In this document: positions 3,717 to 28,484 of the stretch, piece after piece
How positions within the stretch are numbered: position 1 is the first letter of the stretch
How the letters are laid out: each line of letters starts with the position of its first letter
From: Styela clava
Lineage: Eukaryota
Direction: 5' to 3'
Assembly: GCF_964204865.1 (NCBI RefSeq)
Contig: NC_135263.1
Coordinates: 15,934,001 to 15,998,000 of the forward strand
Length of the DNA: 64,000 nt
Notes under the pieces: model-generated
Seen by the model: the letters and a program-made list of their open reading frames with translations, nothing else
What the model was told of the DNA's origin: nothing
The model's database searches: none
Position numbers and translations under genes: made by a program

Positions 3717-3966
3717 GTTAGTAAATGATATTTCACTTTCCTAAAATACGGTATTTATTATAAAGAATGAAATCGTTTTCCAATACGCCGATAAAAACAA
3801 GATTATGGCATTTCAACGATACACAATAGCACAGTGGCAATAAAGAAACATTAAAATGTGCACAATGAATGAAATTGTAATAAATGAAATTGAGTATTAC
3901 ACTCTTCTCCCCCCAGTTGAAATGTCCATACTGTTTGGGGGTTTGGAAAAGGATGATGGTACCTGC

Positions 3967-5128: not shown

Positions 5129-5218
5129 ATTCTATTCAATTCAAGAGTCTTGCTGCACACGAACACAAATATATTTTTGTAACGTTTCGTCTGACCGAGG
5201 TCAGACTTCTTCAGACAA
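5129..5218 (-). mobile_element. 90 bp Penelope pLTR/retrozyme-type insertion carrying a minimal hammerhead ribozyme
   Basis: Interrupts the Gypsy B integrase, with an 8 bp duplication GCTTGACT (5121-5128, 5219-5226). The minus strand reads TTGT-CTGAAGA-A-GTCTGACC-TC-GGTCAGAC-GAAAC-GTTA-CAA. Confidence 0.75.
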
Positions 5219-6023: not shown

Positions 6024-7549
6024 TGTTTATTAGTGAAAATTAACGTTTTATTGAACACAAGCAAAACTTAACAAAAACAGATCAGTTGTCACCGCAAATA
6101 ACAGAATATAAAGTCAGACATAAGACACATGTTGCCTCTGCTACACCACAAAGTACTGAATGACCCTTGGAGACCAGCATGACAGTATTTATACTCAGGA
6201 AGCATGCTTTAGTGGTTTCACCAAAGTACTGAATGACCCCGGCAGTATACCCAGGAACATGCTTCAGTGGTTTTACCTACAATGCTCTACCATCATTCTG
6301 TGCTGTCATTGGTCAGTTAAAGAGTGAGAATAGAATTAAAGTACAGTAACTCAGGATGACAATCACCTGGATAAAATGTAAATGAGAACACACAAGTTAA
6401 CAATCTCCGTCTATTTTCTTTTTAATGTGAGAGAGACCAAGAATTTAATTTGTCTAAAATTAAAAACGGTGTGACGCCCTTCTTGGTCAGACAATCTGCC
6501 AATTGCATTTTAGTGGCACAATTCACAATGCTCATTATCTGCTTAGAAGAAATCATTTCCTTCAAGCTCATATGAGAACTAGTTTGTTTCCCTCAGAGCC
6601 CGTCTGACTCTTTCACTACTTTCAGCCTCAATAAATGCTTTTCGTGACATATGTAAGCGTTTAAATGATTTCCAACAACTTGACTCATTGTTGTCCCTTC
6701 TAACGCTGGACGTTTATCGGTTAGGACTGATGGCGAATTTGGGTTACGACCAAACACCAGCTGATAGGGACTAAAACCATGGCAGTTTTTCAAGGAGTTT
6801 TTGGCAAAGATTGACCACTTTGAAGCGGTCTTCCAATCGAGTGGTTGTTCTTTTCGTACTTTTAACATTATTTCAGTAAGCACCCCATTGTGCCTCTCCA
6901 AAATGCCATGCTGTCGTTTTGATCTCTATCCCGAAATTTTCGGCTATGTCACGAAACTCAGAGTTATTAAATTCTCCCCCATTATCGGTTAAGATTTTTC
7001 TTGGAGTACCATATACACTTATCCAATGATCAATAAAGTGATTGACAATAACTTTGGAACTTTTCGATTATATGATGTACCAAGCACCCAATCGGGTGAA
7101 CAAATCAATACTGTGCATGTACCATAAATTGGAATCCAACTGGTGCAAATCTATCGCAACTTTTTAATTGAACACACTAGCAAGCGGCAAACTGGCAGCC
7201 GGTCTAGGTGGAGTTTTCTTAAACTTTTTACATATAGCGCAGTTGTCACAGGTTTATTTCAATAACTCAAATATAGAATTGTCAGAGTGGCCCGCCTTTT
7301 CTAGAAGATTCTTGAGTTTTGCATATGAAGCATGTCCTAACTGCTTATGCAACTTTATTAAATGCATTTTCGCCTCATTTTTAGTGTAACCATCTTTCAA
7401 AAAAAGAATTCTATCTTCAATTTTATTATCAATCTTAATTGGTAATATTTTTATACAGTAGTGCTTACTATCGGTTGTTCTTATTCCAATACTTCGACCA
7501 AACATCGTAATTTTATCATTTTCAAAATTTATGATTGTTTTCGCTCTCT
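6024..7549 (-). mobile_element. GalEa-like Copia B, 3' half: protease end, integrase, deletion of RT, RNase H end, PPT and 3' LTR
   Basis: Begins RAKTIINFENDKITMFGRS at ~7547. Contains KLHKQLGHAS and integrase ERHNGVLTEI...GFSPYQLVFGRNP, joined directly at ~6567 to RNase H LKEMISSKQI...QLADCLTKKG. PPT at 6403-6423. LTR 6024-6402 (TGTTAA...TAAACA) matches 26992-27316 plus a ~55 bp internal duplication. Confidence 0.9.
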
Positions 7550-8728
7550 AAGTTTGAGTGTTGTTCTTGTTCTTCATGTTTTAATTTTTCTACCTATCGT
7601 TATGAAAAAGCGCCTTTCTCTTTAATCACTGGACCAATTGCTTTAAAATTTGGTTGAACATGTATTTTTTGCAAGAGGGCTATTACTTTCATTTATTCCT
7701 AAATTTTCCATGAATCCTATGAGATCTGATATTTTATTACATTTCGCTGTATTATTTTTTTTATTCATGGGAACACGATTTTTAATTCGCCAAGCGTAAC
7801 GACTGTCTTGTGCTTTGATTTGGCAAAAACTAGCTACGCGAAAATCGAAAGTTTTTCATTGCCGACACGATAAGTTACTGTAAAAAAGTACTGTAAAGTA
7901 CTTCAAATTAATAATTACCACAGTTGTGAGTCGAATCATTTAGTTTTCTATCAACATTGGCACAAGAATTATCAGCACATGTACCATCTCTGTTTCCGAA
8001 CCTGGTAAAGATAGGGCAGCCCGGGTATCGGTACTAGTAAGCTACGATGGTCCACAGGTTCAGTTTCGTCCAGGATATGATCTTGAGGAAATTGTGGGTA
8101 AAATATTTCGTTTTGGCTTTTGTGTCCATGTATTTGAGCAGTGCTTTCTTGTTTCAAATATGATATAAACACTATGCGTCACTGTGCGATTTATTCGGCA
8201 CCAGGAAAAACTTTTAGACGCAAAACGATTTTCCGGATAAATTTCATTAAATAGCATAATTATGTTACCTCTACATACAGTAGTATAAGATATATATATA
8301 CAAAACATTTACCATGAACTGAACAACTGGGAATTTTTTTAAGCATATTGAAATCCTTTAAAGCGAGTGTTTACTTCTTTGATACCGGATTTGGAGCGAG
8401 ATGTTATCACAGAGCACTAATTATCGCAATCAACCGAATAGAATTAATCAACGATTGAATAAAAATGATTTATGAGAATGATTGATGTGACAAATGTTTG
8501 CAAGAATGACCAATTATGAAACATGGCTCACCTTCAACAAAAATGATAACAATAAAAATACATGAAACAGTTACCACAGATTTGAATACTTGTCTGTTAA
8601 TTAAGACATGATAAGGTATTTTAGTTGACAATAATCCAATGAAAACTTTCAATGGAAATAGAAACTGGTTATACGAAATAGGAGAATATATAGGTTGTGA
8701 CGGTATCACACGTTTGGTTATTTATCTT

Positions 8729-11700
8729 CTATTCGATGAAATATTTTTCATCGCAACGAGGTGCATGAAAACGAGCAGAGACACCAAGTTCGTGGAGTTT
8801 GTTGTAGAATTTGATGACACTATTGAGAGATGGCTTTGGTTGCTTGAAGAAATTCCAGAGGAGCCATTCTCCTGGAAATGAGCCATAAATTAGTGTAAAA
8901 TGTACCGAGTTAGAAAGATCAAGATAAAAATAAAATAATGTCTCTGATGTTCACAGCATACCTATATCGATCAAATATGTAACAGGGGAGATATCGATCT
9001 ATACTTATTTTAACTTATAGTAAGCGACACGCAACAAAAATAATCTTGAACCATTGTGCATCAAAGGTCTAGTTCTTTGGTTTTCAACTATTTAGGTGGA
9101 TTGGAAAACCATCGAAACATTACCAGGGTTGGACGAATCCCTGCGCAATGGTTTACTTTTCCTATGCAAAAAACATCATTTGAATAATAAAATTAAAATA
9201 CCTATATTCAGATCCTTTTAGAATAAAAATACAATGTATTTACATTTATTCTCATATAAATCAATGAAAAACTTGAACCCTTGGACTGCATGGTGTTCCG
9301 TGGAATCCCTGTTAGGAACCACTGATTTTTTCATATAATGGATAGCATAACTTTTCATTTGAATTTGAAATATAATTCTATCTCAAGGGATCAATGTTAC
9401 TCATAAATAAAAATATAGTTTACTCACCTTCTTCGAGACATAGCATTATTCCAAAGTAATTGGAATAATCGGTTATAAATACGTAATCGTTTTTGATCAA
9501 GTTTTCCTCATCTAAGTAAGAACAATATTAAAATATAATAGCGCCGGAAAATTGAAATTATAGCAATTATAATTTTGAAATATATATAGTGGTTATCATT
9601 ATACAGTGTTGAAAGTATAAAATATTCAGAACGAAAAAAAAAATTTTGCGCTTGTTTATTCATGGTGAAATTTTTATTTTACGGCTGGAATTCAGCATAA
9701 ATTGATGTGAATGACGAAATTCCCAACAATATTAAAATCACTTAAATGGACTTTTTTGCAACAAAAATATGCACTGAATTTCTGGAGGTTTGAATTTGTG
9801 TATATGAGTTGGCTGAAATAAAAAAAAATCCGTGTTAAGTGTGACGACCCGTATTTGTAACACCGTTATTTGATCTAGATCTATTTAGACTTTGTTTTTT
9901 ATTGCTCGAGACACTACTGGCGCTGTAGCACTGTCAATCTGTCCTTTAGTATCCAGTTAAGATAGGCTACCAGTTGCAGCAATGCAGCTGCTTTAGGGAT
10001 ACCAGCTGTGTTCAGGATACCAATTTTATTCTGATTTTATGGTCATTTTGATAGCCCTATTTATTTTGTCCGACAGTAGGATGACATTACTGCAATTACA
10101 GTTATTTTGGCGCTTGTTGTCTTTTAAAATATCAAGTTGTTTTCAGCTTTTCTGTGAATAATAAGTTAGTTAGCTATAATGTGCCAGATTTTAGTTTCCC
10201 CGATTTTGTATTTGATTTTTGGGCTTTTTTTCAGAATCCAGGTATTTTATTGTATATATCTATATATGTTTTTATTTACATTGTGATAGCTGGTATTTGT
10301 TATTGTACGCTTTTTGTTCTATCGGTTTCATTGTAGTGTTAGTTAATAAAAAAGACGAAAATATCATTAACTGAATAATATTAACTAAGTGAATATTGAG
10401 AAGACGATTGACATCAGAACATATTAGAAGATATTCTAACTGGAAAAATCTATACATAGACTGACGGTATGCTACAAAATGGGTGGTCACATGTAAATGT
10501 AGACGCTAAATTTTCAATTGTATTCATTTCCACTCTTATCAAAAATCACTTTTCACAACAGAATGAGTAATTTTAAGCCAAATTAGGTATTTTCCATCTA
10601 GATAGGGCTTGTCAAATGTCGACACAATATTGTAGCCAACCCCCAAATATATTTTTGGAGAGGGGGAGGGGGAGGCAAATTTATTGTTTGTTTAATGACG
10701 TAATACGACGCGTACTCGTGCATTTTGCTCCAAACAAGGCTAGATAAAATCAGCCACTGATATCTAACAATATCCTAAAGGATTCGCTGTCGAAGTTTTC
10801 CAAGTTACATAAGTACACAGTTTCATCTGTCTCGGTTGATTCATTAGAAGACAGTATTAATGATATTAAGCCAGGAAACGTCGGTTTCAGTAAATCGTTC
10901 AAGAATAGAATAAAAAGGTGTTGAAAAAGACGTAAAAATTTATGTCTCACTGAAAATGCCGCAAAATTGCATGAAAAAATATTTGTTACGCCTATTCATA
11001 AACATATATACCTATTTTCCGCGCTTTGGCTTTAATTTTTCCGTCCAACGTGTACTCGTGTGCGTCTTTTAAAGACGGTTCTGTAAAAGAGTAGTAATAC
11101 AGTCAGTTGTATGCCAGAAATAAATATAAATTAGTCTTATGTTTCAAGCTAAGATTGAGGTATGGAAGACTGCTATAAAGACCTATTAGAGACTATAGTA
11201 TAACGAACGATATATGTTGTAAATATATAACGAGATTATCGGTCGGAGACCGAAGACTTATTGATCGAAACTGCGGTTTCGATTCATGACTCTATAGTGA
11301 CACCGCGTGTCCCATCACTAATTAATTAATAACTCGCTAATTATAATTCATCCAAAATTAATAGGCTTCCGAGATATGATGAATGCACATGCAAAATTTG
11401 GAGCAAATTCAACCACTCCTTCGTGAGATATCGCGTGCATCTAACAGACAAACAGACAAATACCTATCAACATACTTACCGATCTAGAGATCGATAAGTA
11501 ATAATGTATACGTCATACCATCTTCCTGACTTCGGTGGTAAACTCCTGGTGTATGGCGTATATAGTGATTGGTCAATTCAGCTCTGTGAGACCTAAAATA
11601 TGTGTATTACTTGATTCGAGACACATCTCATTGCAAATTGTTTGCTATCATTGGACGTGAATGGGTTGAGTTTGGACAGTTTATTTAATACAAAGTGTAT

Positions 11701-12842
11701 ATTTCTTTCGTTCTGTCATGACTCATGATGTTGTTGTTTTTGCTATTGTTGGTATTCTTCTTCTCATAGTTATAAAAAAATCGCTTTTAATGTAATTACT
11801 GGATCAATAGCTTTAATAATCCAATGGTTGAAGAGAATATATATTCTGCTAGAAGGCTATTAATTACTAATATATTTTAAAAGTTTCTGTGGCCTCTATG
11901 GGATTCGTTTCTTGTATGCGACGACGTCATCAAGTAAGAATTGCGCTCCTTGTCGAGGTCCCGATTTCGCATAAGTCGATATCTGGTGGTTAGCTGCGGT
12001 ACGGAACCGGCTATTTGGCCTCCGTGTCCATATAATTGAGAATGACTCTCTTGTTTTATGAAAGCATGGTTGCACAAGCTATTTCAAACTTTTAGAAATC
12101 GGAGTTCGAATTCTCGACTGAGAGTAAAATAGGCTTACAAATGCCAAAGATGTTAAACGTCGGAGAGAGTATAGCAAAATCAACAATATTTATTGTTGTA
12201 TGGGCCGTAATCGGTCAAAGGTCAAGTTGATCACCACGTGGCTATCAATCCTTGCTACCCATTGGTTGATTAACTTGTATATATATAACAATTATTGAAA
12301 TAGGAAATGTCGAGCGTTTCACGAGTTAGGTCAACTATTGAAGAGGATGAAAGTTATGATATGTCCGAAAATGAATACAAGTAACCTACCCAACACCAAA
12401 TTCTTCCACATGAAAACTGAATCCCGTAGAAGTTATTGTAAAATTGTTCACACGAACACAAGTCACAACAGCCGAAACGGCGTCGTTAGTTTGAACTCCG
12501 AGGTACCAAACTGTGTCTTTTAGCTGTAAGTACAAATTGAAATGAGTTGGACTTTTTATCTTGCGTCAAAGATTTATTTATATCCATAAATATTCATTCT
12601 ACTTATGAATAATACGTATCTCGATTGCATAATAGGTCATTGATCAATTATTAATATATGAAAAACTATTTGAAATATAGAAATAGGGTAAAGGGTTTCG
12701 TTTCGCAAATGAGTGGTTGGTAAATCTATACCTTTGAAATATCAAGTTCTTCTTGTGGGATGGGCAGCGCGCATTTCTCCGCAAATACCAAAGAAACTGA
12801 CCCACACAGAAACACAGCTAACGTTAAGCAATTGAAACCCAT
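8729..12842 (-). CDS. Secreted lipocalin-like protein (5-6 coding exons, ~181-210 aa)
   Basis: Exons: 12842-12732 (MGFNCLTLAVFLCGSVSLVFAEKCALPIPQEELDISK; signal peptide plus ApoD-like N-terminus); 12523-12390 (LKDTVWYLGVQ..., SCR1-like WY); 11592-11519 (SHRAELTNHYIRHTPGVYHRSQED); optional 10895-10809; 9511-9428 (EENLIKNDYVFITDYSNYFGIMLCLEE, TDY motif); 8871-8729 (EWLLWNFFKQPKPSLNSVIKFYNKLHELGVSARFHAPRCDEKYFIE*). All sites are GT-AG except the optional exon's acceptor, and the frame is open. Intron phases 0,2,1,(1),1 match the chordate lipocalin pattern. Confidence 0.78.
11229..11501 (-). mobile_element. Helentron-associated (DINE-1/HINE-like) non-autonomous element, in lipocalin intron
   Basis: Same family as 23333-23696 and 55548-56459: subterminal IR ACTTATCGATC/GATCGATAAGT, (TGTC)n microsatellite, 3' hairpin TCGGTC-TCC-GACCGA, T-rich flanks. 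Confidence 0.7.
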
Positions 12843-14055
12843 TATTAGTGATGAATCAATTTCAAATTATCGATCCACTACAACTAAAATTAAAAATCAA
12901 ATTAAAAAATTTGATTAAACTTGAGGAATAGTTGATAAGAAATGTCCGGATGGGTCGATCATTAACTTCAATTTGGGGTCTTTTGTACCATAACTCTAAC
13001 TTCTTGATTTATCTCTTCCTGTTCGTTTCAATAAATGGCAATGAAAGTTCTGTACTGCCTTCCTTTTAATTGGGTCCGTCCGAACCTGTTATGTTAAAGT
13101 TGCTATAAAGCAAGTAGCCCATGTGTCCCTCCTCGCCTCGCATAATACATATTGCAGCTTGAAAATATGCAATTGAATGAATTACGTGATGGTAACATTG
13201 TTCTTGATATTAAACTAAAACTAACAAATGATATTTTAAAATAAATCGCAGCAAACTCTGGATATTCTGATGGGTTTTGCCTGTGAAAAATAATCTTCCG
13301 AGAAACACCACTTTCACCACGGGCATACCAAGCACTACTTCACAAGCATGCAATACACAATCAAATGCAGTGAAGACAGAACGAAAATTTCCTATACGAT
13401 TTCGCCTAAATTGATCTCACTGTAATCTTTGACGTGTTTCACATAGACACACTTGGAGGTATTTGATTGACAGTATAAACAAAATTTCTGTTTCTGAGGA
13501 ATTGATTTATTACAGAGCTTTCTGTAGAACTCTAAAGAACATGCAAAACAAAGCGTCTTTAAAAATCCGTGGCCCGAAGATGAGACAAGGAAATCACTGA
13601 TATAAGAAGAGCTTCATCATGAGTGGGTATAATATAAGACATAGCTGCAACGATACTTACCGTGTCCGCACTCCGCAGCGAAGCCATCAGTTCAAACCTG
13701 AACTCAAGTCTCATCTTTTATTTTATTCAGAAATGCGCATCTGGATGTTGCTGTGAGTTTCACGCAGTTGAATACTTTACAGTCTAAATATAAACATTTA
13801 AAATTGCAAAATCCTAAGGTTTTACCCAGCGGTTCAGTAGTTCTCACATTCTACGTTTCACTATGAGTGTGGTCTGCGAATAGACCAGGGGCGAAACGTT
13901 GAATAGAGTGAGATTCATATTATTTATCCCGGGCGAGAGGAAAGCCGATAGGACAACATTATCATATGGCGAACCGCGGCTCCTTATCCAATTACCAAGA
14001 TTGTATTTTCCGCTAAAAGGCAATTACATTCATTTATTTCTAAACTCCAAGAATC

Positions 14056-14194
14056 TGTTAAATTTGTTATATTTCTGTCAACTAGCTTTTCCCAGTTGAA
14101 TGAGCATGACTTCTGCTGTCATCAGTTACAGGTGACAGATCATGACCAACCAGCTGTGAAGGTGAAGTGGCCATGTGCTCTCAATAGTCTGGTG
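14056..14194 (+). repeat. 5' LTR (truncated) of Copia A, displaced by the inversion
   Basis: Starts TGTTAA and is the inverted homolog of 487-617. Immediately followed by the LINE 5' end. Confidence 0.72.
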
Positions 14195-14940: not shown

Positions 14941-16060
14941 TGTGGTGATTTATGTCTCGAAATCTAGCAACACCTAAAACAGCAACGACATTTGACCCTG
15001 CTGACGTATACTGTTCGTCCTTTAATAGCATGGTGTTTTGATTTGAAAGTCAGTCTTTGGTTTGTGCTGCTTTAAGACTCTTAGTCGACGTTTGAGCTAA
15101 TGAAAGCCTATTAATTGTTTCTTTCTGTATTAGGTTCACCACAATTTTATTAGCTCAAAACTTGAACTTGAAACGAATAACTGGTTTTCCGGAAGCAATG
15201 GCATCTTCCGACGAAAAACCTATTCGGGTGCGAGTGCTTAATGTCTTGGAGCTCTAAAAGTATTTTCCCATTGGGACAGGATGCTTACAAATTACTTAAC
15301 AGCTGTAGAATCCAACAGGTCCACGGAAAGTGTTTCAAGGTGGACATTTATCACCTGACGTGTTTTCCTTTGTGGAAGATGTGTATGTGTATGATGAAGC
15401 TATGGTGATTTTGCGCAAAGATTATCATAAAATAAAGAATATCATATATGCAAGACACACGCTGGCTACACGAGATCAGTTGAGCAGTGCCGAGCAACAC
15501 AGAGAGGAGGCGCTAAGACAGGGGTCACCAACGCGTTGCCCGCGGGCACCAAGTCGCCCGCAAAGACCACATGAGTCGCCCACATGTCTGTTCCAAAATA
15601 AGCATAACAACGGCGCTTATAAGTAAGCTACATCAATTAATATTTCACATCTTGTCACTATTCATTGGTCAGCGCAGTAAGGGCAGAAAAAGCTCGCCTT
15701 TCAAATCAAACAGAAATTACATTTTACCAGACCAGTGTTTGGTTCAAGCTATCTTTGTGAATCAACATTTTTTGACATGAAATTCACCAGGAACTAAACA
15801 CGAAACACGCCTCACTGCTAATGAAAATCTGCAAGACTCGCTCAGAGTTACAGTGTCAAGTTACACGCCGGAGTATAACACACTGGTGGAGAAGCATTAG
15901 ACCAAATTTGTTTGATTTTAGTTTTCTCCATGTTGAAAACAAGATATTCATAATTAGTTAAATGTGTTTCAACATTTAACAGTACAACTGTTAAGTTCAT
16001 TTTTATCTTAGGCTTATGTAGAGTGTTCGTAAAAACGCAGGTACATTGTGAACCTGTGGT

Positions 16061-19000
16061 TAGGGATGTAAGTTTCGAATATTTTTTTTTTCGAATCGAA
16101 TACCGAATATTTTTTTTTCGAATCGAATATTTCCGAATCGATTCTGATTAATACAACATCACTTTTTCTTTGACTTTATTCAACACACACAAGGTTATTT
16201 TTCAGTAAACACGCATATTAATACATGCACGCATAATAATGTTCAATTGAGGTGAACAATAAACTAGCAATCATTCACTGCTGCATCAAACTTCGGTTGC
16301 AGTGCAAGAAGTTTAACTCATTTACGTGTGTACCACTGAGTCTGGTTCTTAATCTGGAAACTGTCAAACCAGCAGAAGAGAAGGCTCTCTCCGCTGGTGC
16401 TGACGTACACGGTATGGCCAAGTACCGAATGGCCACTTTGTGTAGGGATGGAGAATCAGTTTTTCGGGCATGCCACCACAATAATGGGTTTAACCGCTCT
16501 GTATTTCTGTCCAATTTCTCTTTCAAGTACTGTGAAATTTCCTCCGACACTTTAGATGCATATCCTTCCGATTCAGACGAGCTTGACTGTTCAATTCCTA
16601 TCGAAAAGAGTCCTTGGAGAGAATTTTGTTCCACCTCTGGAGCAGTAACCGCAGAAGGTTCAACGTGTATTTCATCTTGTATTTCTGGCATTGAAGCTTC
16701 AGTGGCTTCCATTTCTAGAGAAACTCTGACCTTGAAACAAAAAAAAAAAAATATTATATGGGTTTGTACAAGTCTATAAATGATATGAAAGGGATAATGT
16801 TAGTTGAACCACTTGTATAACTCACACAATGAACAACAGAATCCAGAATACTACCAACACATGTAAAAGAAAAAATCACAGTTGCAAATTAGGAACATCA
16901 CAGCCTATGCGTTTGAAAGAGTAATTTTGACCTGACTTCACAAATTTAAGAAATACAATGGTATACCAGATTTTAAGTGAATATTACCTGGACTCTGAAA
17001 GAACGATCAAAAAATTTCCCTTTATGACAAGGATGGAGCCATGTTGCTTTTTGGAACAAGTTGACCTCTTCTTGACTGGGTATTTCCAGTATAGAACGAA
17101 ATCGAAGTTTGAGAGAATTTATGAGAGTGTTGCAAAATTCATTCGTAATAGCTGATAGTGTCCCACCCTCATTTCTCTTTTCCTCACAATGGCCCAACAG
17201 CCCTTTTGTGAGAGGAATCAAAGAGGAAACTGTTACATAGTCACCTTCAAGATGGTCAGAGGCAGCCTGTCAAAATATGAAACAAATAATTTTATTTCAT
17301 ACATATATGTGCTAACAAATATCAAGAGATATGCAAAGTAATTTACACTACCTTGAAGGGTTCTAAAATCTCTGCTAGCACTGTAAGCATATTCCATGTT
17401 GTTTCACCTAATTCCAGGTGACTTGCTGCTGTTCTAGGAGTAATTGTTGGGTCACATAATACAGATCGAATAGTCCATTGATGAGAGATCAAATTTTTTA
17501 TCATAACATAAGTGGAATTCCATCTTGTAGATACGTCGATTGGCATTTCTATTGAAGGAGATGTGCCATCCTGAGCATGTCGATGTCTTAAAGTTGTCAT
17601 AGCTTTCGTTGATCGGCGAAAGTACTGCACCAAATGACGAGCTCCAGCTGCAAAAACGAAGAAATTATTGCACTTAACAATACAAATGCTTACAATGAAA
17701 TAATAACCTATGCAGATTAAAAAATATGCATTTTTTCTCTCATAAATTAGGTTTTTACAAAGACAAGTAATTTTAGTTAATAAACCTTTTCAACATAAAT
17801 TAAAATCACCTAATGCATGAGATATTTCTTCAATTTTTAAGCCATCTTTGATGCAGAGCTGAATCGTATGTGCAGCGCATCTAATATGGTACCAACCATA
17901 TTCTTCGTAAAGTGAACGACAAGCTGACACCACATTTGCTCCATTATCTGTTGTCACTGAGAGCACCTTTGTCGGGCTGATATCAAACTCACTCAATGAT
18001 TTTAAAATTTCTGATTTTATATTTTCTGCCGTTTGAGCCTCATCCATCTGTTCTGTTGTCAATACATACTTGAGTAATTGACCATCGCTCGGATCTACGA
18101 AATGGGCAGTGACAGTTATATATGCTTGCATTCTTGCACTGGTCCACATGTCTGTGGTAAGTGAGACAGATTTTTCTTTTATGGCCCCTATTATGTTAAT
18201 AAGCTTTTCTTTACATTCTTTATACCTCCTTTCAATATGTTTAGTTACAGTGTTACGCCCGGGTAATACATAGCCTGGCTGTAAGTGATGTATCAGTGAA
18301 CGAAAATGCTGTCCCTCAACAAGGTTTATTGGCCGGAGGTCTCCAACAATAACTTCAGTTATCAATCTATCTATTGTCTCACACTGACCCTTAGTTATTG
18401 GCTTGAAATAGGCAGTCAAGCTGCTTTGCTGAACTGAAGAAGTTCTGGAATTAAAATAACAACAGGTTAACCTCATCTCAAGACTGCAAGAGGACTTGTT
18501 GAATAAAGTCCACTATCCAGACTATCTGACTACAGGACTATGTTTCACCAAAAACTACAGACAGGTAGAACTACTGACAGACTGAACTAACAGAAATTCA
18601 TAGCATGTAGCGGCTTAAGCGGACGAAAATTAGAAAACAAAAAGATAAATATACGGGTGTACAGGATAAATATGTAAATCGTATCCTAAGCTATTGACTT
18701 ACCCAGCATGAACAATGTTTCGGGGAGCAAAGGTGTCCTCACATGTAGGCCTATCCTTCACGTCCTTAGGCCGGATAGGGCTTGAAATGCCAGTTGAGGC
18801 GGTCACAAACGTATGCTTCCTCCGTAAATGGTTTAGCAAGTTTCCGGTAGTGTTTTGATACACAAATTTTTCCTTGCAAACAGAGCACAAGGTGTAAAAT
18901 GTGCCATTTTCCTCCAGCGGCGTACAGAAATAATTCCACACAACAGACGTCGGCCGCCTACCCTGTTTTCTGATACCGGGTTTCGACTTCTTATTGATGT

Positions 19001-19364
19001 TTTGCATCTATCAGTTTATGAAATACACGTTTGAAACATACGATGGCATTACAAATGCACGAAGCGACTAAAATAAACGTGCGGAGCTCGCTCGCAGCCA
19101 CAATAAACATGTCTAAACCAGTCACTTTGGTCTAAACTTGTCCCGGCGACATAGATAAATAGTCGATAAGGCGCAATTTTAACAATTAATCGATTTTATT
19201 CGCTGGCCAACGTGACGTTAGTCTTACGACGCGGAGAATGCATTGTTTCAATTGATTTTTTTTTAATCAGAATCACGGCTCTTTTTTGAAAATTGCTTCG
19301 AATCGATTCGAATCAGATTTGATTCGAATCGATTCGATTCGAAATTCTGAAACTTACATCCCTA
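16061..19364 (-). mobile_element. Autonomous-type hAT (Ac family) DNA transposon, 3304 bp
   Basis: Perfect 16 bp TIR TAGGGATGTAAGTTTC. Perfect 8 bp TSD CCTGTGGT (16053-16060, 19365-19372). Subterminal TTCGAATCGAAT repeats at both ends. Confidence 0.95.
16275..19007 (-). CDS. hAT transposase with BED zinc finger (ZBED1/Ac-like), 5 exons, 656 aa, apparently intact
   Basis: Exons 19007-18703, 18444-17810, 17647-17352, 17266-16988 and 16730-16275 total 1971 nt, all GT-AG with compatible phases 2,1,0,0. Motifs: BED finger (VWNYF..CSVC..HLRRKH), TTDMW, TTDNGAN, CAAH, TRWNS, SAPAERAFS. Confidence 0.92.
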
Positions 19365-22300
19365 CCTGTGGTGTGGTTTCCGAGGATATTATTATAGTGA
19401 TCATTTTGAATAACGATCAGTTTGAAAATGGAAGTTCTATGGATAGTGATTAATTTGCTACGTTGTGATAATCGTTTGATTTCCTGAAGAATTCTAAGGT
19501 TTATCCGTGTTTTTACTTGAGTGAATAGCAGTAATTATCAATAATTGAAGCTTGATCGAGCAAATTGACTTTTTTGGAAGTTTGCATTGAACTGGTAGCC
19601 CTCGGCTCAATCTGTACCCAGAAAGTAGCCCTCGGCTTCGAAAAGGTTGGTGACCCCTGCGCTAAGAGATGCGCTTGTAACAGGGCCATGTTTCGCTAAT
19701 ATTCAACGAAGATTGCTAGAATATGACAAATTATCACTGGGAAAGGCTATTCAAATTGCTGATTCTTTGGAACGAGCCGAGAAATTCTGGCATCCGTACC
19801 GGCAATCATTGCCTCGTCAAGCAGCCGTTACTTCAATGAATGATCAATTGTCGGTAAACATGGAAGACCAATTTTCTGAGTTTAGCTCTGATAGTGACCA
19901 ACACGTAGCTGCTGCAAGAAGTACTTACGGAACAAATGTTAACCGTAGAAGGGGTTATTTTTGCGGACGAATTCATGCTTTAAATCGACTGAAGTGCCCT
20001 GCTAGGAACGCAGAGTGTTTTAATTGTGGCTTTCGAGGACATTTTGTAAAGGTTTGCCGTAAAGCGAAGAAATCGGTTGCTACCGTAAACGATTCGCACC
20101 TGACTTCAATTATGGATGGTATTCATACTTCGTTGTCACGATTGACGATTACTGCTAAAATTGCGGAAAACCTTCTGATGGCTCTATTGGACTCCGGCGC
20201 TTCACAGAGTTACATAAAGGCATCCGTGGCAAGAAGTCTTGGCCTCACCCTCTACGGTCCAAAAACTGTAGTTGCACTTGCTTCGAACAAATCAGTTGCA
20301 CAAACGATTGGGTTTGTAGACGCACCTCTAAAGATTTGAACGAGAGTTAATGGTGCAATGAAGTTTTATGTTGTGGAAAATCTGTGTATGAACATCATAC
20401 TGGGCCAAGATTTTTTGAGCAAACATCGAAAAGTTGTCTTCAAATTCAACGGAGACCTCGACTCCTTGTACGTTGGTAAAGAGTTCTGAAATTTGGCTAG
20501 CGCAAAAGTAAGTTGACTTTTATGTATTTTTCGATCTGTTGACGATAACTGTAAGCCCATTGCTGTCAGGTTCAGAAACTACAGTTCCGATGATCTAAAG
20601 TTCATTAAAGATGAGATTGCTAGTTTGTTGCTGGAAGGCATTATAGAACGGTCAGAGTCGCTGTGGCGCGCTCGAATATTGGTCACAAAAAAATCAAAGA
20701 ACGTCATGTTATTGACTATTCACAAACAATAAATAGATACACTGCTCTTGACGCGTATCCCTTACCTCGCATAAACAATATATTTAACGAGGTTGCTAAA
20801 GAAAAGATATACAGTAGGCCCACCATTGATTTACAAATTCCTATTTCTAACGTTGACAGACCTTACACTGAGTTCGAAGCTGCTGGCCCTTGCTTACTTA
20901 GATACCGCCACAATTTTTGGGGATGATCAACAACAACATGATAAACGATTAAAAGCTTTTATGAAGGCTGCGGAGCGGCAAGGTTTGACATAAAACAAAA
21001 ATAAGTCTGTATTTTCAGTGACTGAACTGAAATTCCTTGAGCATCTGATATCCCATGGCAAAATTTGGCCAGATCCTGATCATTTACAACCTCTTATTAA
21101 TCTTGAACCCCCTAAAAATGGAATTAATTTGAACCGTTGCTTGGGATTATTTGCCTACTATTCGAAATGGATATCTAAATTTTCTGAAAAATTAAAGCCA
21201 CTTTCATCAACTAACACATCGTTTCCCTTCAAAGGCAAAGCTTTATCTTCTTTAGATCAATTGAAAGCTGATATGTTAAAAGCGTGCTTGGGGTGCATAT
21301 ATGAAGATGAACCGTTTGTTATTGAGTTTGATACGTCCAAATTTGCGATTGCCGCCATTTTGAACCAAAAAGGGAGGCCGGTCGCCTTTAACTCTAGAAC
21401 ACTCGGTAAGTCGGAATTAAGGCATCCGGCCGTAGAAAAAGAAGCGGCGGCGGTTGTTGAAGCTGTGAGAAAATGGGAATATCCTTTGCATGGGAAAAAG
21501 TTTAAACTGGTAACTGATCAAAAAGCTTTGGCATACATTTTTCGGAAAAAATCATGAAAGTTAAATTAAAAATACGAAGTTACAATTGTGGAAACTAGAA
21601 CTTTCTGTATTTGACTACGAAATTGTCCATTGCCCGGGTGTGGGAAATGTGGCACCAGACGCATTGTCAAGAATTTGTGCTAGCAACACTTGTTGCACCA
21701 CGAGTCTTAGAGAAGTTCATACTCAATTGGGTCATTCTGGTGTTCGTCGATTACTTCATTTCATACGGTCTATGAGGGAATGCGCTAATTGTCGACAATG
21801 TGTCCCAATAAAACCTAACTTTCATAGATTCAATGGGAGCCATCACTCGGTCAAAGCTACTCGGCCGTGCGAGAGAATTAGTATTAATTTTAAAGGTCCC
21901 GTCAGGGGGAAAAGGCGATATTTACTCGTGGTTTTGGACGAGTATAGTAGATTCCCTTTTGTATACGCATGTGCGGACATGACTGCAATCACTGTCACTA
22001 AATGTCTCGCATCATTATTTTCATTGGTTGGTTTACCGGGGTATGTTCACAGCGACAGAGGAACTTTCTTCTTGGATAATGAACCGAGACAGTTTCTTGC
22101 AAGAAAGGGTGTAGCGACTAGCAACGCAATTTCTTATCACCCGAAAGGGAATTCCCAATGCGAAAGAGCAAACCAGACCATATAGAAAACTATTAAATTA
22201 ATGCTGTTATCAAGGAATCTGCCCTGTAGTGCTTGGGAGGAAGTTCTGCCAGACGCTCTACATGCGACAAGATCACTTCTTTGCACCCCCACTGGTACTA

Positions 22301-23089
22301 CGCCACATAATCGCATGTTCAATTTTGGAAGACGATCTATGCTTGGAAACTACGTACCAGACTGGCTATTGAATGGTGGTAAAGTACTTCTACGCAATTT
22401 TGTACGGGCGAAAAGCGACCCAATTTGTCAATAAGTTGAGCTTCATTAAGCCAACACCAAGTACTCGTTAATCCGCTATCCCGATGGTCGAGAATCCACG
22501 GTTTCAACGAGTGATCTGGTGCGATTCCCTGAAACTGTACAATCTGACTACAAGCAATTGGAACTTGAAAAGATTAAACCCTTATCGAAATCAACTCCCA
22601 AGAATATGTCATTCAGTTTTGAGAATCCCGTCTCGAAGAATGATGAGATGACATAAACCCTTCTGATGACATAGTTAAAATAGCAGATAAACTTCTACTC
22701 CAATTAAGAAGGAAGAGATGCGTATTCGTCGGTCGAGTCGTTTCAAAAGAGCACCTGGTCGTTATGGAGACTGGGCCTTGTAATTGGGCGACTTTCGAAT
22801 TCCTTTGTTTCAGGTCAACATTTCCATACTTGAGTTCTTATTATACTTTTATTGTCTTACTTTTATCAGCGGGAGGGAATGTGGTGATTTATGTCTTGAA
22901 ATCTAGCAACACCTAAAACAGCCACGACATTTGACCCTGCTGACGTATACTGTTCGTCCTTTAATAGGTGTTTTGATTTGAAAGTCATTCTTTGGTTAGT
23001 GCTGCTTTAAGACTCTTGGCCGACGTTTGAGCTAATAAAAGCCTAGTATACAATTTTGTTTTTTTCTGTATTAGGTTCACCACACTTAC

Positions 23090-23791
23090 CAAAGAAATTC
23101 CGGTAAAACAACGACTCACTTCATGAGGAAGATGGTGCCCACTTAAATCGAGAAAGGGCAAAAGTTCTGGTAGGTAAATTAGTGAGAGTTATTATCGAAA
23201 CTTCCCGAGTCATTATCGAAAAATACCAAAAGTGAAGGACATATGAAAAAGGATCAGACTTTGTACGGTTCGTCATCTATCTAATACTGTTTTCTTGTGT
23301 TACATTAGCAGTATAGATGACTCTGATTATGTTTACTTATCGATCTCGATCGGTAAGTATGTTGATTTGTCTGTTATACACTTTCGTATGTAACGCGATA
23401 TCTCACGGAAGCGAGGTTGAATCTGCGAGATATGATGAATGTGCATTCATCATATCTCGGTCCAGAAGCATCTTTATTTCGGACTAATTATGCCGTATAA
23501 TTAGCGAGTTATTAATTAGTTAGTGATGGGACATGCGGTGTCGCCATTAAGTCTCGAAACCGCAGTTTCTGTTTCAGGGGATCCCCTACCTTTCGTCACT
23601 GCAAACGATTGTGTGCGTAACAATGCCCTGTCTGCGAGGTGGAGCGTTTACATGTGAAAGATCGATAAGTCGGCGGTCTCCGATCGCTATCTAGTTTTGA
23701 TTTTTGTAATGAAAGATTAATATATAGTATAGGATTTAATACTAAGTGATCATTAGTGTAGTTTACTTGGAACAAAATGGGAATGGCAAAC
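23090..23791 (+). mobile_element. L1/Tx1-like LINE, part 2: ORF1 esterase end, spacer and ORF2 start
   Basis: DLPKKFR*NNDSLHEEDGAHLNRERAKVLVGKL (SGNH block V, DGxH) continues from 14940 across the TSD. ATG GGA ATG GCA AAC at 23777-23791. Confidence 0.6.
23333..23696 (+). mobile_element. Helentron-associated (DINE-1/HINE-like) element
   Basis: TTACTTATCGATC...GATCGATAAGT, degenerate 3' hairpin, ends CTAGTT. Homologous to 11229-11501 and 55548-56459. Confidence 0.7.
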
Positions 23792-26700
23792 TAACTAACC
23801 ATCTTATATTATGTGTGTATATTGCAGGTACCACCATCATCCCTTATAATAAATACCGTATTTTAAGAAAGTGAATTATCATTTATGATGAAAGCTTTTG
23901 TGGATTAAATATATCGTCATCTTACAACATTTTATTCATTGAAAATCAACAAAGCCAAGAGTAGTGCCAGTTGAGAGTGCCCTGTTGATGGGTGTGAATG
24001 GATGTCACAGGACTTTGATGCAGCTTTAGCGGATGTCTTAACCGCCGCTCTCCAACTACATGGCAGGACAGCCCACAGCCCACCGACGGCAGCAACACCT
24101 ATCCCGAAGCTCAAGTTTGATCCCCCATATTATCTACGGGGTGCGACCCAGAACAATGGTCTGCTTTCAAAAGACAATGGGATATGTACAAGATTGGGAT
24201 GTGTATCACATATAATATGATCCCTACAGCATTATTTCATTGTTGCGTCCAAGAACTGAGGTCAGACATCATGAGAGACATACAAGAGAATGTGGCACAC
24301 ATGTCGGAAGACAATCTGCTATCTGCAATTAAGCGCCTTGCTGTAAAGGACGAGAGAACGCTTGTCTACAGGATGAAATTGAGCAAGATGACTCAATGAC
24401 CTGGAACTAGCGTTCGTATTTTTCTGACCAATCTTCGAGGACAAGCTGCTTTATGTAATTACATAGCAAAATGTAAACAAGCTGGTGGTTATCACACATT
24501 TGGCTATAGCCACGAGATTATCAAAGACAACTTGGTGAGAGGAATTGCTGACCATGTGATCTTAGCGGACTTATTGGGAGATTCCAAAACTGACATGACT
24601 CTTGACGAAACTGTCTCATTTATAGCTCAAAAGGAACAGGGAAAAATTACCAAGTTCGCTGTTGGAGTGTCAGCTGATAACATGTCGAGCGGCAAGCAAA
24701 AGAAAGTCAGCGAAATGTTGGGCATGTGGAAATGCAGCTCACGGACCACGTAATGACATCAGTACCAGATCCAAGAAATGACAGACTTGGTCCTCAGTAT
24801 GTGCTAAATGTGGCAATAAGGGTCTTTACACAGCAATGTGCAGCGAGTGCATTCATTGTGATTCTTGGGGTCAGAGGAACCGCTCGTCAAGAAATTGCTC
24901 ACGCAGCAGGAGAAACAAGCAGTTTGGAAACAGCAGTTCATCGGATGGAAAACTCTCACTATCCCCATATCAATATGAGACAGCAGGAACGTTTGAGACA
25001 CTGTGGCCAGTCGAAAACTTGGCACAAAACAAAACAATGTCTTGACATCCCATCGAAGCCACATCCTATGGTCCAGGCAACATTAACGCCACTGCCTTCT
25101 GAACATGCTAAATTTGGGCATGGAATCAAGTGCACTAAAAATTTGAAAGCCACAATGATGCCTATGGTAGCCGACACGGGATGCCAGAGCACGATCATAC
25201 CATCAGCCTCAGCATTTGCCATGGGATTCAGTCGCAGTGATTTGTTGCCTGTCAAACTGGTACTGCATGGAGCCATCAAGGAAAACCTTGGTGTTATCGG
25301 GGCAGTCATCGTGGGCGTGACAATTAAGGACAACATAGGACAAACCCGATCAACGAAAATGTTTTGCTATGTGGTGATATAATGCAAAAAGCTTTCATTT
25401 GCAGGGAGGCATTGGTAGACATAGATGCAATCCTATGCGACTTCCCATCAGTACCTGCTGCAGATCACATAACGGATGTGTTAATACCGCCATACATATG
25501 AACAGGTTGATGAAGCCGCATGCCACTCTTGCCTAAAAAGAACCAGCAAACCGCCACCTATACCGGAGAATCGACCACAAAGCCTCTCAGCCACAGGGGA
25601 GGATGTTGATGCCCTGAAGGAATGGCTAATCAACTACTACGGTTCTACTACTTTTAATGTATGTAAACATCAACCTCTTCCGTTGATGAATTGTAAGCCA
25701 TTACACTTACACATAGACCCGAGTGCGAAACCAGTGGCAGTTCACGAACCTGCTTTGGTACCTGTTCATTGGGCAGAAAACGTCAAGTCAGATCTGGAGA
25801 GAGATGTGCGTATTGGTGTGTTGGAACGGGTTAGCACAAACACCCCTATCACATGGTGCTCACGCATGGTGGTGATCGGTAAGGTGGACGGATCCCCGCG
25901 TCGTACAGTTGACCTCCAACCACAAAATCGAGCCTCCGTTCGGCAGACTCATCATGTTCCCACACCCTTCCACTTATCGGACCGTGTACCTCAAGGAACT
26001 ATCAAAACGGTCACCGACGCTGTGCCAATTCGAGAAAAGGATCGTCATATCACTACATCCATAACGACATGGGGTCGTTTCCAGTATAAAGTTGTACCAC
26101 AAGGTTTCCTGGCGAGTGGCGATGCATATAACCAGCGGTACGACGCAATCATATCAGACTTCTCAAACAAAGTCAAATGTGTTGATGATACATGCATGTG
26201 GGCGTTTTTAATAGAGGATTCATTTTTTCAGGCATGTCGGTGGCTCGACCTATGTGCTCGCAATGGCATTACCTCAACCCTAAAAAAATTCAATTTGCAC
26301 AGGGAGACCGTTGATTTCGCTGGACTAACAGTTACTCCGACGAATATTCGTCGTAGTGCAAAATTGTTGGATGCAATTAGGAACTTCCCAATTCTCAAGG
26401 ATATCACTGGGGCTCGAGCGTGGTCTGGATTGGTAAGTCAAGGAGCTTACGCGTTTGCAATTGCCAGACAAATAAAACCATTCATAAATTTACTGAAGCC
26501 TCCAGTGAAATTCACGTGAACTGGGGAACTAGACAACCTCTTCCGTCAGTCAAAAGATATTATCATCAGAGGAATAATGGATGGAGTTAGACTGTTCAAT
26601 CTTGGCAGGCCAACATACCTGGCTACAGATTGGTCAATTGATGAAATTGGGTTCTTCATGATGCAGAAGTATTGCTATTGCAAAGCTCGCACACCTGCAT

Positions 26701-26978
26701 GTTGCCCTGACGGCTGGAAATTGTGCTCGGTGGGGAGCCGGTTCACACATCCAGCTGAGAGCAGGTACGCTCCGATTGAAGGGGAGGCCCTAGCTGTGGC
26801 ATATGCACTACATCAGATACGTTACTACATTTTGGGATGCGGAGATCTAATAGTTGCGACTGACTACAAACCATTGGTCCAGGTTCTCAACGATCGATCC
26901 CTAGCTGATATTAGTAACAAAAGACTATTGAGCTTGGAAGAGAAAATGTTGCCATTCACATTCACCATTTTGCATGTT
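23792..26978 (+). mobile_element. Ty3/Gypsy (Mag-like) element B, 5' half: 5' LTR, gag, protease, RT, RNase H
   Basis: LTR 23792-23885, gag remnants, protease VADTGCQS. RT ORF 25683-26519 (WCSRMVV...RRTVDL, PQGF, KCVDD). RNase H LATDWS...RYAPIEGEALAV...TDYKPL, ending FTFTILHV at the Copia B LTR. Confidence 0.92.
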
Positions 26979-26991
26979 AACATGTCACCAT

Positions 26992-28484
26992 TGTTAACTT
27001 GTGTGTTCTCATTTACATTTTATCCAGGTGATTGTCATCCTGAGATAACTGTACTTTAATTCTATTCTCACTCTTTAACTGACCAATGACAGCACAGCAT
27101 GATGGTAGAGCATTGTGGCTAAAACCACTGAAACATGCTTCCTGAGTATTAATACTGTCATGCTGGTCTCTAGAGGTCATTCAGTACTTTGTGGTGTAGC
27201 AGAGGCAACATGTGTCTTATGTCTGACTTTATATTCTGCTATTTGCGGTGACAACTGATCTGTTTTTGTTAAGTATTGCTTGTGTTCAATAAAACGTTAA
27301 TTTTCACCAATAAACAAATGGTAGCAGAGGAAAACTAAATATGGAGCATAGATACAAGAATCCTCCAGTTTTTGAAGAAAGCAAACTTTACAGTCAGTGG
27401 AAAAATGAAGTGTCAGTGTAAACTTTACAGTCAGTGGAAAAATGAAGTGTCAGTGTGGACATTGGTTACAAGTCTTCCAAAGCCTAAACATGCTATTGCT
27501 GTTGCTTTATCTCTGACTGGGAAAGCCAAAGAAACAGTCAAGAAGATTGCTGCAGAAGAGTTGAACAAAGATGACGGTATGTCAACTCTGCTAGAGAAAT
27601 TGGATGCAGTTTATGAAAGAGATAAAGTCGATCAGGCATATGATGCGTACCAGAGAGAGAACAGAGAGAAAATGTCAGAGACTACATTTCGAGATTCGAG
27701 AGGCTGTATAAGAAGTTTGAAATAACCTTGCCAGATTCTGTATTGGCGTATAAACTTCTTGAAGGTGCTGAACTGAGTCAACACGATAAACGACTTGTTT
27801 TAACAGCAACCAGTAAACTGGAGTACGAAAGCATAAAATCTTCTCGGAAAATAATTTTTGGGGAAAGCCTGAATCCTAAGTCAACTTCTGCTGATTTTAA
27901 AGATGAACCACTCTATATCTCTGGAAAAGATTTGTATAAAAGAAAAGGTCCTCAAAAAATGAATCCTCTGCGGAAAGATGGCTCTGTTAGCCGTTGGGCT
28001 GTATGTCGATCAATTTATCATTGGGTCAAAGATTGCCCTCAGAAAGAGCAGCGGAACCAATTGAAATTCAGTTGTGCAATTTGTAAATCCAATCAACATT
28101 ATACTACAAGGTGCCCTCACAAGGTAGATAAATTCAGAAGCGGAAGCTGTTAACGAAGATGAGCTTGTCAGTATCACACTATTATCAAATGGTCGAAATA
28201 GACTGGTAGATGAAACAAGAGGATGTGCAGTAATTGATTCGGGTTGTACATCAACAGTTTGTGGAGAAGATTGGCTAGCGGACTACGTCGAATTATTGCC
28301 TCTAGATTTGCACTACAAAATTAAGCGAAAGGTGAGCTCCGTTACTTTTAAGTTTGATGATGGCAATAAAGTGCGATCAATTTATGCTATACGTTTGCCA
28401 ATACAGATATCGGGAATAGCATGCTACATAATTGCAAAGTCATTCCCAAATCGTTTCCCCTACTTCTGAGTAAAGAATCTTTAA
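26992..28484 (+). mobile_element. GalEa-like Copia B, 5' half: 5' LTR, PBS, gag, protease
   Basis: LTR 26992-27316. PBS TGGTAGCAGAG (tRNA-iMet type) at 27319-27329. ATG at 27341 gives MEHRYKNPPVFEESKLYSQWKNEV. A 38 bp tandem duplication frameshifts gag. Two zinc knuckles, protease AVIDSGC. Stops at PLLLSKESLK, on TTAA 28481-28484. Confidence 0.92.

What the first reader, a model, noticed from the sequence alone, without database searches (positions are those of the whole stretch)
7549..28484. ~21 kb inversion that cuts through a four-deep transposon nest and carries a host gene
Seen in sequence: flipping 7550-28484 rejoins four split elements at once. (1) Copia B protease ...PLLLSKESLK (+, stops 28484) continues as RAKTIINFEN (-, from ~7547); the unbroken junction is visible in the paralog at ~30850-30870. 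(2) Gypsy B RNase H ...FTILHV (+, 26978) continues as EKRNLGPDAASRHP (-, ~6020), and its two LTRs have flanks CAAAC/CTAAC, a 5 bp TSD with one mismatch. (3) The LINE ORF2 start MGMAN (23777-23791) joins NDNLLSLITYNVN (-, from 3716). (4) The Copia A LTRs at 14056 (+) and 617 (-) become direct repeats around everything. Inference: a real TE-associated inversion that also reoriented the lipocalin gene.
Basis: partly seen in the sequence, partly recalled or inferred. Interest (0 to 1): 0.8.

Follow-up and report, generated by a model that had tools for sequence, protein, structure and literature searches.

The report
Transposon-end inversion through nested retroelements
A 21 kb stretch of this animal genome has been flipped, splitting a pile of dead retroelements, and the breakpoints point to a small cut-and-paste (piggyBac-type, TTAA-inserting) transposon as the likely cause; this is a known kind of event.

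Summary
Window 7550-28484 is inverted relative to its surroundings. Three other Copia B copies run unbroken across the point where copy 1 is split (7549|28484). Two LINE copies do the same for 23791|3716. Gypsy B has an inverted LTR pair with the CAAAC/CTAAC duplication. The 94-nt Copia A repeat proved to be a true short LTR.

New points:
- Base 28485 is the exact end of a 751-bp dispersed TTAA-flanked element (TE752, 28485-29235).
- All three broken sites are TTAA sites: Copia B copy 1, the edge of the host unit, and Copia B copy 2.
- Flipping does not restore the second junction. About 600 nt of host-unit flank and the RT/RNase H part of Copia B copy 2 are missing from the chromosome. The event was therefore inversion plus deletion.
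- The three nearest paralogous host units are on the minus strand. The flipped unit is on the plus strand.

Best reading (0.6) is aberrant transposition by a piggyBac-type transposase using one end of TE752, resembling reversed-ends transposition.

Read evidence was inconclusive, so misassembly is not formally excluded. The lipocalin identity of the carried gene was not confirmed. The scan had already noted the TTAA element at this place.

The parts
6..456 (.). High-copy ~450-nt dispersed repeat just outside the nest
   Evidence: 40 scored matches at 88-90% identity, all covering query 6-456; 2736 first-look candidates.
486..579 (-). Copia A 3' LTR (94 nt)
   Evidence: 84/94 identical to 14101-14194 in inverted orientation; the unit forms same-strand pairs around Copia ORFs elsewhere.
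1748..3317 (-). Copia A protease-integrase-RT remnants (reference residues 340-1128)
   Evidence: tblastn with an intact related Copia ORF.
3678..3716 (-). Continuation of the LINE ORF2 start, after the Gypsy B insertion
   Evidence: L077 and L078 are colinear from w23695-23804 into this stretch.
3722..6023 (-). Gypsy B 3' half: 3' LTR 3722-4194 and integrase region up to the Copia B insertion
   Evidence: LTR ends, CTAAC flank; Integrase_H2C2 in 5240-5734.
6024..7549 (-). Copia B copy 1, 3' half: 3' LTR 6024-6404 and degenerate integrase up to the break
7549..7550 (.). Junction J1: Copia B left half joined to the host unit. Both partners were broken at a TTAA, 1-2 nt of which are missing. No transposon end lies here.
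   Evidence: Paralogs read ...ttTTAAgtttgag across this point (4 of 5; one has TTAG); the point lies about 40 nt inside an old MITE copy.
7550..13997 (+). Host unit H, one unit of a tandem array on the same contig, now in the opposite orientation to its three nearest neighbours. Gene identity not confirmed.
   Evidence: paralogs and their strands; no lipocalin hit.
14101..14194 (+). Copia A 5' LTR
   Evidence: The paralogous unit at C18:15.3046 Mb carries the same LTR at the same relative place.
14941..23087 (+). Gypsy A, inserted in the LINE, with a perfect CTTAC duplication.
   Evidence: L077 has the empty site. The hAT note comes; I did not test it.
23694..23791 (+). LINE 5' part ending in the ORF2 start, cut by Gypsy B
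23792..26989 (+). Gypsy B 5' half: short 5' LTR 23792-23885 and gag to RNase H
26990..28484 (+). Copia B copy 1, 5' half: 5' LTR 26990-27316 and gag-protease, ending in TTAA at 28481-28484
28485..29235 (+). TE752: non-autonomous TTAA-inserting (piggyBac-type) element. Its left tip is junction J2. TTAA follows at 29236-29239.
   Evidence: 41 matches, mostly 93-95%; sharp ends in 9 of 9 other loci; TTAA abuts the left end in 7 of 10 and the right end in 5 of 10; empty TTAA site in the C8 copy.
29240..31224 (-). Copia B copy 2, truncated by TE752 at about reference residue 958. Its RT/RNase H/LTR part is missing.

Best explanation
Ancestral layout. The nest lay on the minus strand, with Copia A containing the LINE, the LINE containing Gypsy B, and Gypsy B containing Copia B copy 1. 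It was followed by host unit H, also on the minus strand like its array neighbours. Then came H's usual ~600-nt flank, some unknown DNA, and a second Copia B copy carrying the TTAA element TE752 in its RT region.

Proposed event. A piggyBac-type transposase, of which the genome encodes many, cut TE752's left end free from Copia B copy 2. It joined that end to a TTAA in the protease region of Copia B copy 1.
- The piece between that target and a TTAA at the edge of H was re-attached in reverse.
- The DNA between H's edge and TE752 was lost.

Closest established scheme. This is reversed-ends (alternative) transposition, which inverts the segment from a transposon end to the target and deletes the inter-transposon segment. 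That scheme predicts a partner element at the first junction. None is present. So either a partner has since excised (piggyBac elements leave only TTAA), or that junction was closed by end joining with loss of 1-2 nt.

Shown:
- the arrangement
- the three TTAA sites
- the transposon tip at 28485
- the missing DNA

Inferred:
- that a transposase did it
- which ends were paired
- the order of steps
For: - 28485 is the terminal base of a discrete element. Nine of 9 other fetched copies start within 4 nt of it and end at w29228-29239. TTAA abuts the ends.
- Left of TE752 is Copia B copy 1, ending in its own TTAA.
- Right of TE752 is Copia B copy 2 at a TTAA that is an empty site in the C8 copy. 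The C14 copy is also colinear across it.
- H is broken in the middle of a TTAA that 4 of 5 paralogs keep. TTAA occupies only 0.73% of window positions.
- The flank shared by the paralogs is absent from the window and from this part of the contig. The RT/RNase H part of copy 2 has no match on contig C18.
- There are no inverted repeats at the two outer sides of the breakpoints, so homologous recombination is not indicated.
- PF13843 (piggyBac transposase) gave 121 matches, many with open frames of 470-710 aa and no stops.
- The RET product as described for maize Ac/fAc is an inverted flanking segment, loss of the inter-element fragment, and a TE just outside the second endpoint (passages read in 10.1101/2021.03.08.434479).
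- LTR identities rise inward: Copia A 89%, Gypsy B about 94%, Copia B about 96%. This fits halves of single insertions.
Against: - No transposon end lies at J1. 7550 sits about 40 nt inside an old MITE copy.
- The paralogs' flank is not a dispersed or TTAA-bounded element. A partner element is therefore pure inference.
- J1 lacks 1-2 nt of a clean TTAA.
- TE752's terminal repeats are imperfect, and I did not link it to an autonomous piggyBac.
- Four literature searches found no described natural piggyBac-mediated inversion.
- No uninverted allele or outgroup was available.
Confidence: 0.6

Rival explanations
1. The rearrangement came from three ordinary double-strand breaks, or from replication template switching, joined through short A/T-rich microhomology. 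TE752 was only a bystander, or inserted afterwards into the TTAA created at the junction.
For: J1 has no transposon end and is imprecise. The genome is AT-rich, so TTAA is not rare (469 in 64 kb).
Against: A breakpoint exactly at the terminal base of a transposon, with that transposon's own target motif on the other side, is not expected from random breakage. A later insertion would need to hit this one TTAA out of millions, with only about 170 first-look candidate copies in the genome. All three broken sites are TTAA.
Confidence: 0.17
2. Two or three TE752 copies had inserted at the TTAA sites. Recombination between inverted copies flipped the segment, and later excision and deletion removed the extra copy and the intervening DNA.
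For: TE752 is multi-copy and inserts at TTAA. piggyBac-type excision can leave only TTAA (established knowledge of the family, recalled).
Against: It needs at least three insertions plus a deletion ending at a TTAA that has no element end. Only one TE752 copy is in the window. The right flank of TE752 is copy 2, not the host flank this route predicts.
Confidence: 0.1
3. Assembly artefact: the 21 kb block was placed in the wrong orientation.
For: No read or contig shown bridges 7549|7550. Copia B sequence near both breakpoints has a 94% copy at 29964-31224. The only other-sample run (X5) gave zero depth on the unique parts.
Against: The window has no N. The similar stretches are short (under 800 nt) and 6% diverged. 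An assembler has no reason to switch exactly at TTAA sites and at a transposon's terminal base. X1-X3 contigs cover all 30 bins, and no joint or loose end is listed at 7549/7550, although 269 loose ends were not shown.
Confidence: 0.06

Closest known systems
Reversed-ends (alternative) transposition inversions of maize Ac/fAc (hAT superfamily)
   Same: - The inverted segment runs from a transposon end to a new target.
- The DNA between the two elements is lost.
- A transposon lies just outside the second endpoint, with the target motif at the junction (passages read).
   Different: - This is a different superfamily (TTAA-type, not hAT with 8-bp duplications).
- Only one of the two junctions carries an element.
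- It is a natural fixed or unknown-frequency event in an animal, not a selected maize allele.
- Table S4 of that paper (the duplications) could not be seen.
Inversions by ectopic recombination between inverted transposon copies (e.g. Galileo in Drosophila buzzatii, PMC2775673; search listing and abstract only)
   Same: A transposon sits at an inversion breakpoint.
   Different: That route needs inverted homologous copies at both breakpoints with exchanged duplications. Here there is one copy and no inverted repeat at the outer sides.
piggyBac superfamily non-autonomous elements (TTAA-specific MITEs)
   Same: - TTAA flanks.
- Termini beginning (AA)CCC... and ending ...GG(TT).
- Sharp ends and many copies, with transposase genes present in the genome.
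   Different: - The terminal repeats are imperfect (about 10 of 14).
- No autonomous partner with the same ends was identified.
- This copy has flanks from two different places.
Rearrangements ascribed to the domesticated piggyBac transposase PGBD5 in human tumours (recalled; not read here)
   Same: A piggyBac-type enzyme is proposed to make deletions and inversions at signal sequences.
   Different: That is a somatic, disease setting with a domesticated enzyme and other signals. This comparison is recalled from memory only.

Membership tests
Two-breakpoint chromosomal inversion | Sequence on the two sides of one breakpoint is contiguous in unbroken relatives once one side is reverse-complemented | tested here: met
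   Copia B: 3 of 3 covering copies. LINE: 2 of 2 copies. Gypsy B: domain order and its own LTR pair with duplication.
Two-breakpoint chromosomal inversion | The second junction is also restored by the same flip (a simple, balanced inversion) | tested here: not met
   7550 and 28485 were never neighbours. The paralog flank and the remainder of Copia B copy 2 are missing.
Two-breakpoint chromosomal inversion | Reads span both junctions (not an assembly error) | tested here: inconclusive
   contigs of X1-X3 cover every bin, but no bridging piece was shown. X5 was uninformative.
piggyBac-superfamily non-autonomous element (TE752) | TTAA target-site duplication | tested here: met
   TTAA abuts the left end in 7 of 10 loci and the right end in 5 of 10. 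L013 and L020 share flanks. An empty TTAA site is present in C8.
piggyBac-superfamily non-autonomous element (TE752) | Terminal inverted repeats of CCC.../...GGG type shared with an autonomous element | tested here: inconclusive
   The ends read (AA)CCCTG... and ...GGAGG(TT), with about 10 of 14 complementary. No autonomous partner was sought beyond the presence of PF13843.
Reversed-ends transposition product | A transposon terminus at each inversion junction | tested here: not met
   J2 has one (28485). J1 has none.
Reversed-ends transposition product | A matching new target duplication at the two junctions | tested here: inconclusive
   TTAA is complete at J2. Only (T)AA is present at J1, and it could come from either partner.
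Reversed-ends transposition product | Loss of the segment between the two elements | tested here: met
   The flank of H and the RT/RNase H/LTR part of Copia B copy 2 are absent.
NAHR inversion | Inverted homologous repeats at both breakpoints | tested here: not met
   Self-BLAST shows none at 7550+ versus 28485+.
Lipocalin gene (carried host gene) | Match to the lipocalin fold or family | tested here: inconclusive
   PF00061 gave no match in six-frame, exon-by-exon search of the genome. None of 10 pieces of H matched. Earlier notes of the scan say the family is too diverged for Pfam (unchecked).

The most novel reading that the evidence does not exclude
This is a natural example of alternative (reversed-ends-type) transposition by a piggyBac-family element in a tunicate. 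It produced an inversion plus deletion whose partner junction is nearly scarless because piggyBac elements excise cleanly. If so, such events would be systematically under-recognised, since only one breakpoint keeps a transposon. TTAA elements would then be active remodellers of tandem gene arrays in this genome. The same TT|AA bond at the edge of the host unit is also the endpoint of an independent ~150-nt deletion in the C9 paralog.
Probability: 0.35. Interest if true: 0.5.

Novelty: new member of a known kind. Interest (0 to 1): 0.35.

Why it matters
- It gives a base-resolved natural case in which the cause of an inversion can be read from the junctions. A cut-and-paste element end sits at one breakpoint, its target motif marks all three broken sites, and a deletion accompanies the flip.
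- It shows that a nest of split retroelements can mark an inversion without having caused it.
- It warns annotators that half-elements on opposite strands 20 kb apart can be one insertion.
- It reoriented one unit of a tandem gene array and replaced its upstream flank, which could change that copy's regulation.
- It remains a single local event of a known general kind.

Tried and rejected
- **A transposon end at 7550.** The ~410-nt MITE family that overlaps 7595-7808 starts about 40 nt to the left of the boundary in the paralogs. Rejected.
- **The paralogs' ~600-nt flank as a second TTAA element, the hoped-for partner.** It occurs only in the array paralogs and shows no TTAA-bounded left end. 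Not supported.
- **The missing remainder of Copia B copy 2 elsewhere on the contig.** Not found.
- **Reads.** One stretch around J1 was laid.
  - Logan contigs of X1-X3 (one sample, probably the assembly's own) cover every bin, but no bridging piece was listed.
  - The Hi-C run of another sample had zero depth on all unique parts.
- **Lipocalin.** PF00061 against the genome and Pfam on 10 stop-free pieces gave nothing. A look-up by sequence in the scan's notes was blank, which means nothing.
- **The C8 Copia B locus as a guide to the ancestral state.** It turned out to be rearranged itself, with no TTAA at its junction. It was used only for the empty TE752 site.
- **The paralogous unit at C18:15.3046 Mb.** It shares only the outer layers of the nest and does not reach either breakpoint.
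- **Literature.** Four searches found no paper describing a natural piggyBac-mediated inversion. I read passages of one maize preprint. Its supplementary tables were not available to me.
Full report
**What was checked first.** The window is contig C18:15934001-15998000 of a 377-Mb animal assembly. Earlier notes of this scan name it the sea squirt Styela clava. I did not check that name. The window has no N.

- w6568-7549 matches w29964-30857 in direct orientation.
- The next bases of that paralog (30864-31224) match w28471-28108 in reverse.
- An inverted pair lies at 6024-6404 and 26990-27316.
- A further inverted pair lies at 3722-3770/4161-4194 and 23837-23885/23792-23825.
- Another lies at 486-586 and 14094-14194.

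I did not build the flipped sequence. All tests compare the separate pieces with unbroken natural copies.

**Junction one is exact.**
- Reading the bases, the left piece of Copia B copy 1 ends at 7549. The right piece, read in reverse, starts at 28484. Together they reproduce the paralog's sequence, with one base of ambiguity.
- Of four other Copia B copies examined, three cover the point and all three are unbroken across it: window copy 2, C14 and C3. The C8 copy does not reach the point.
- Against an intact related Copia polyprotein, the plus-strand half reaches residue 380 at w28448, which extrapolates to about 392 at 28484. The minus-strand half starts at residue 390 at w7547.

**The outer layers.**
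- *Gypsy B.* It has RT_RNaseH on the plus side (26520-27056) and Integrase_H2C2 on the minus side (5240-5734). Its own LTR ends are at 23792 and 3722, flanked by CAAAC and CTAAC. These flanks belong to the LINE ORF2 start.
- *LINE.* Two of two fetched LINE copies run from w23695-23804 straight into the reverse complement of w3722-3678. One has a complete endonuclease ORF.
- *Copia A.* The repeat is only 94 nt (84/94 identical) and I saw no duplication. However, one search shows the same unit in at least eight same-strand pairs 2.4-4.5 kb apart. Six of these bracket Copia integrase hits, so it is a genuine short LTR. Copia A pol remnants lie at 3317-1748 on the minus strand.
- *LTR identity.* It rises inward: 89%, about 94%, about 96%. 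This is expected for halves of single nested insertions.
- *Other insertions.* Gypsy A (14941-23087, perfect CTTAC duplication) and a hAT-like element are further insertions inside the inverted block.

- Base 28485 is the tip of a transposon. A search with 28485-29285 gave 41 matches, mostly 93-95% identical. In 9 of 9 other fetched loci the homology starts within 4 nt of 28485 and ends at 29228-29239.
- The ends read (AA)CCCTG... and ...GGAGG(TT). TTAA abuts the left end in 7 of 10 loci and the right end in 5 of 10. This 751-bp element (TE752) is therefore a TTAA-inserting, piggyBac-type non-autonomous element.
- The genome has 121 matches to the piggyBac transposase family, many with long open frames.
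I confirm that. Its left flank is Copia B copy 1, ending in that element's own TTAA. Its right flank is Copia B copy 2, at a TTAA that is an empty site in the C8 copy. The C14 copy is colinear across the same place.

**The host block.**
- w7550-13997 is one unit of a tandem array. Units lie at 15.312, 15.321, 15.332 and 15.437 Mb on the plus strand. Others lie at 15.901, 15.927 and 15.933 Mb on the minus strand, the last directly left of the window. The three nearest units are therefore minus while this one is plus. Only the flipped orientation gives a head-to-tail array.
- Six paralogs reach the point equivalent to 7550. Five continue leftwards with a shared sequence, and the C9 copy does so after a ~150-nt gap.
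- That flank is absent from the window. Apart from short fragments, it occurs only in the array paralogs.
- In 4 of 5 paralogs the break point is the middle of a TTAA.
- It is not a transposon end. It lies about 40 nt inside an old MITE copy.

**Consequence.** Flipping 7550-28484 puts 7550 next to TE752, which was never an ancestral neighbour.
- The flank of the host unit has no copy at this locus.
- The RT/RNase H/LTR part of Copia B copy 2 has no match on contig C18.
- The event was an inversion plus a deletion with three broken sites, all at TTAA. TTAA occupies 0.73% of window positions.
- One junction (J2) is a standard transposon-end/TTAA joint.
- The other (J1) is a TTAA-to-TTAA joint lacking 1-2 nt.

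**Mechanism.** The closest established scheme is reversed-ends transposition. In it, two transposon ends that face each other are cut, the DNA between them is lost, and the ends insert into a nearby target. This inverts the segment from one element to the target (passages read in 10.1101/2021.03.08.434479).
- Three of its features are met: the inverted segment from element to target, loss of intervening DNA, and an element just outside the second endpoint.
- One is not met. There is no element at the first junction.
- Two readings could explain that. A partner TTAA element may have sat at the host unit's TTAA and later excised. Or only TE852's... that is, only TE752's end was transferred, and the other two ends were joined by repair.
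- I could not decide between these, and I found no trace of a partner.
- I put 0.6 on a transposase-mediated origin involving TE752's end.

**Rivals.**
- *Random breakage or template switching with TE752 as bystander (0.17).* It is hard to square with a break at the terminal base of the element and three TTAA sites.
- *Recombination between several TE752 copies followed by excision and deletion (0.1).* It needs more steps and predicts a different right flank.
- *Misassembly (0.06).* It is not formally excluded.
  - It showed no bridging piece, and 269 loose ends were not listed.
  - A Hi-C run of another sample had no depth on the unique parts.
  - Against an artefact, there is no N, the repeats near the breakpoints are short and 6% diverged, and an assembler would not choose TTAA sites and a transposon tip.

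**The carried gene.** I could not confirm a lipocalin. PF00061 found nothing in the genome in exon-by-exon search. Ten stop-free pieces of the unit gave no relevant Pfam hit. Earlier notes of the scan describe a large family of Pfam-invisible lipocalin-like six-exon genes in this genome (unchecked). That the block is a unit of a tandem array is shown. What it encodes is not.

**Novelty.** TE-mediated inversions are well known. Four full-text searches found no description of a natural inversion made by a piggyBac-type element, but that is a weak negative. I class this as a new member of a known kind, of moderate-to-low interest. Its main value is the base-level readability of the junctions.

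Noticed in passing
L047 (G000:C8:21546000-21555999), about 5070-9430: A second Copia B locus is also internally rearranged. LTR, gag and protease on one strand abut RNase H, RT and integrase on the other. It has an inverted LTR pair 97.7% alike, a 135-nt RNase H duplication, and a ~74-nt direct repeat of host flank at both ends. There is no TTAA at its junction.
   Followed up: partly
L008 (G000:C9:2576423-2580003), around 2206: The C9 paralog of the host unit has an independent ~150-nt deletion. Its right endpoint is the same TT|AA bond at which the window's unit is broken. This is a possible fragile or target hot spot.
   Followed up: no
L089 (G000:C18:15304600-15309500), 215-1911: A paralogous unit 0.64 Mb away carries the same Copia A LTR, the LINE 5' part, and a Gypsy A reduced to LTR-flanked remnants (w14117-15340 and w22969-23376, 93-95%). 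The outer layers of the nest therefore predate that segmental duplication.
   Followed up: partly
L078 (G000:C19:4844200-4847100) versus window 3321-3716: The junction between the LINE 5' fragment and Copia A sequence is shared with a locus on another contig. The chimera, or the segment holding it, therefore exists more than once.
   Followed up: no
window 5000-10500, run X5: A 2026 Hi-C run with the same species label but another sample showed zero depth on all unique parts of the stretch at 95% likeness, despite about 5x sampling. Either that individual lacks or differs strongly at this locus, or the label covers a diverged lineage.
   Followed up: no
window 6-456: A ~450-nt dispersed repeat with thousands of first-look candidates, copies 88-90% alike with sharp ends.
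   Followed up: no
I did not test it.
   Followed up: no
genome-wide: The Copia family with 92-94-nt LTRs has several ~4.5-kb copies with paired LTRs and long open frames. It looks like a recently active family.
   Followed up: no
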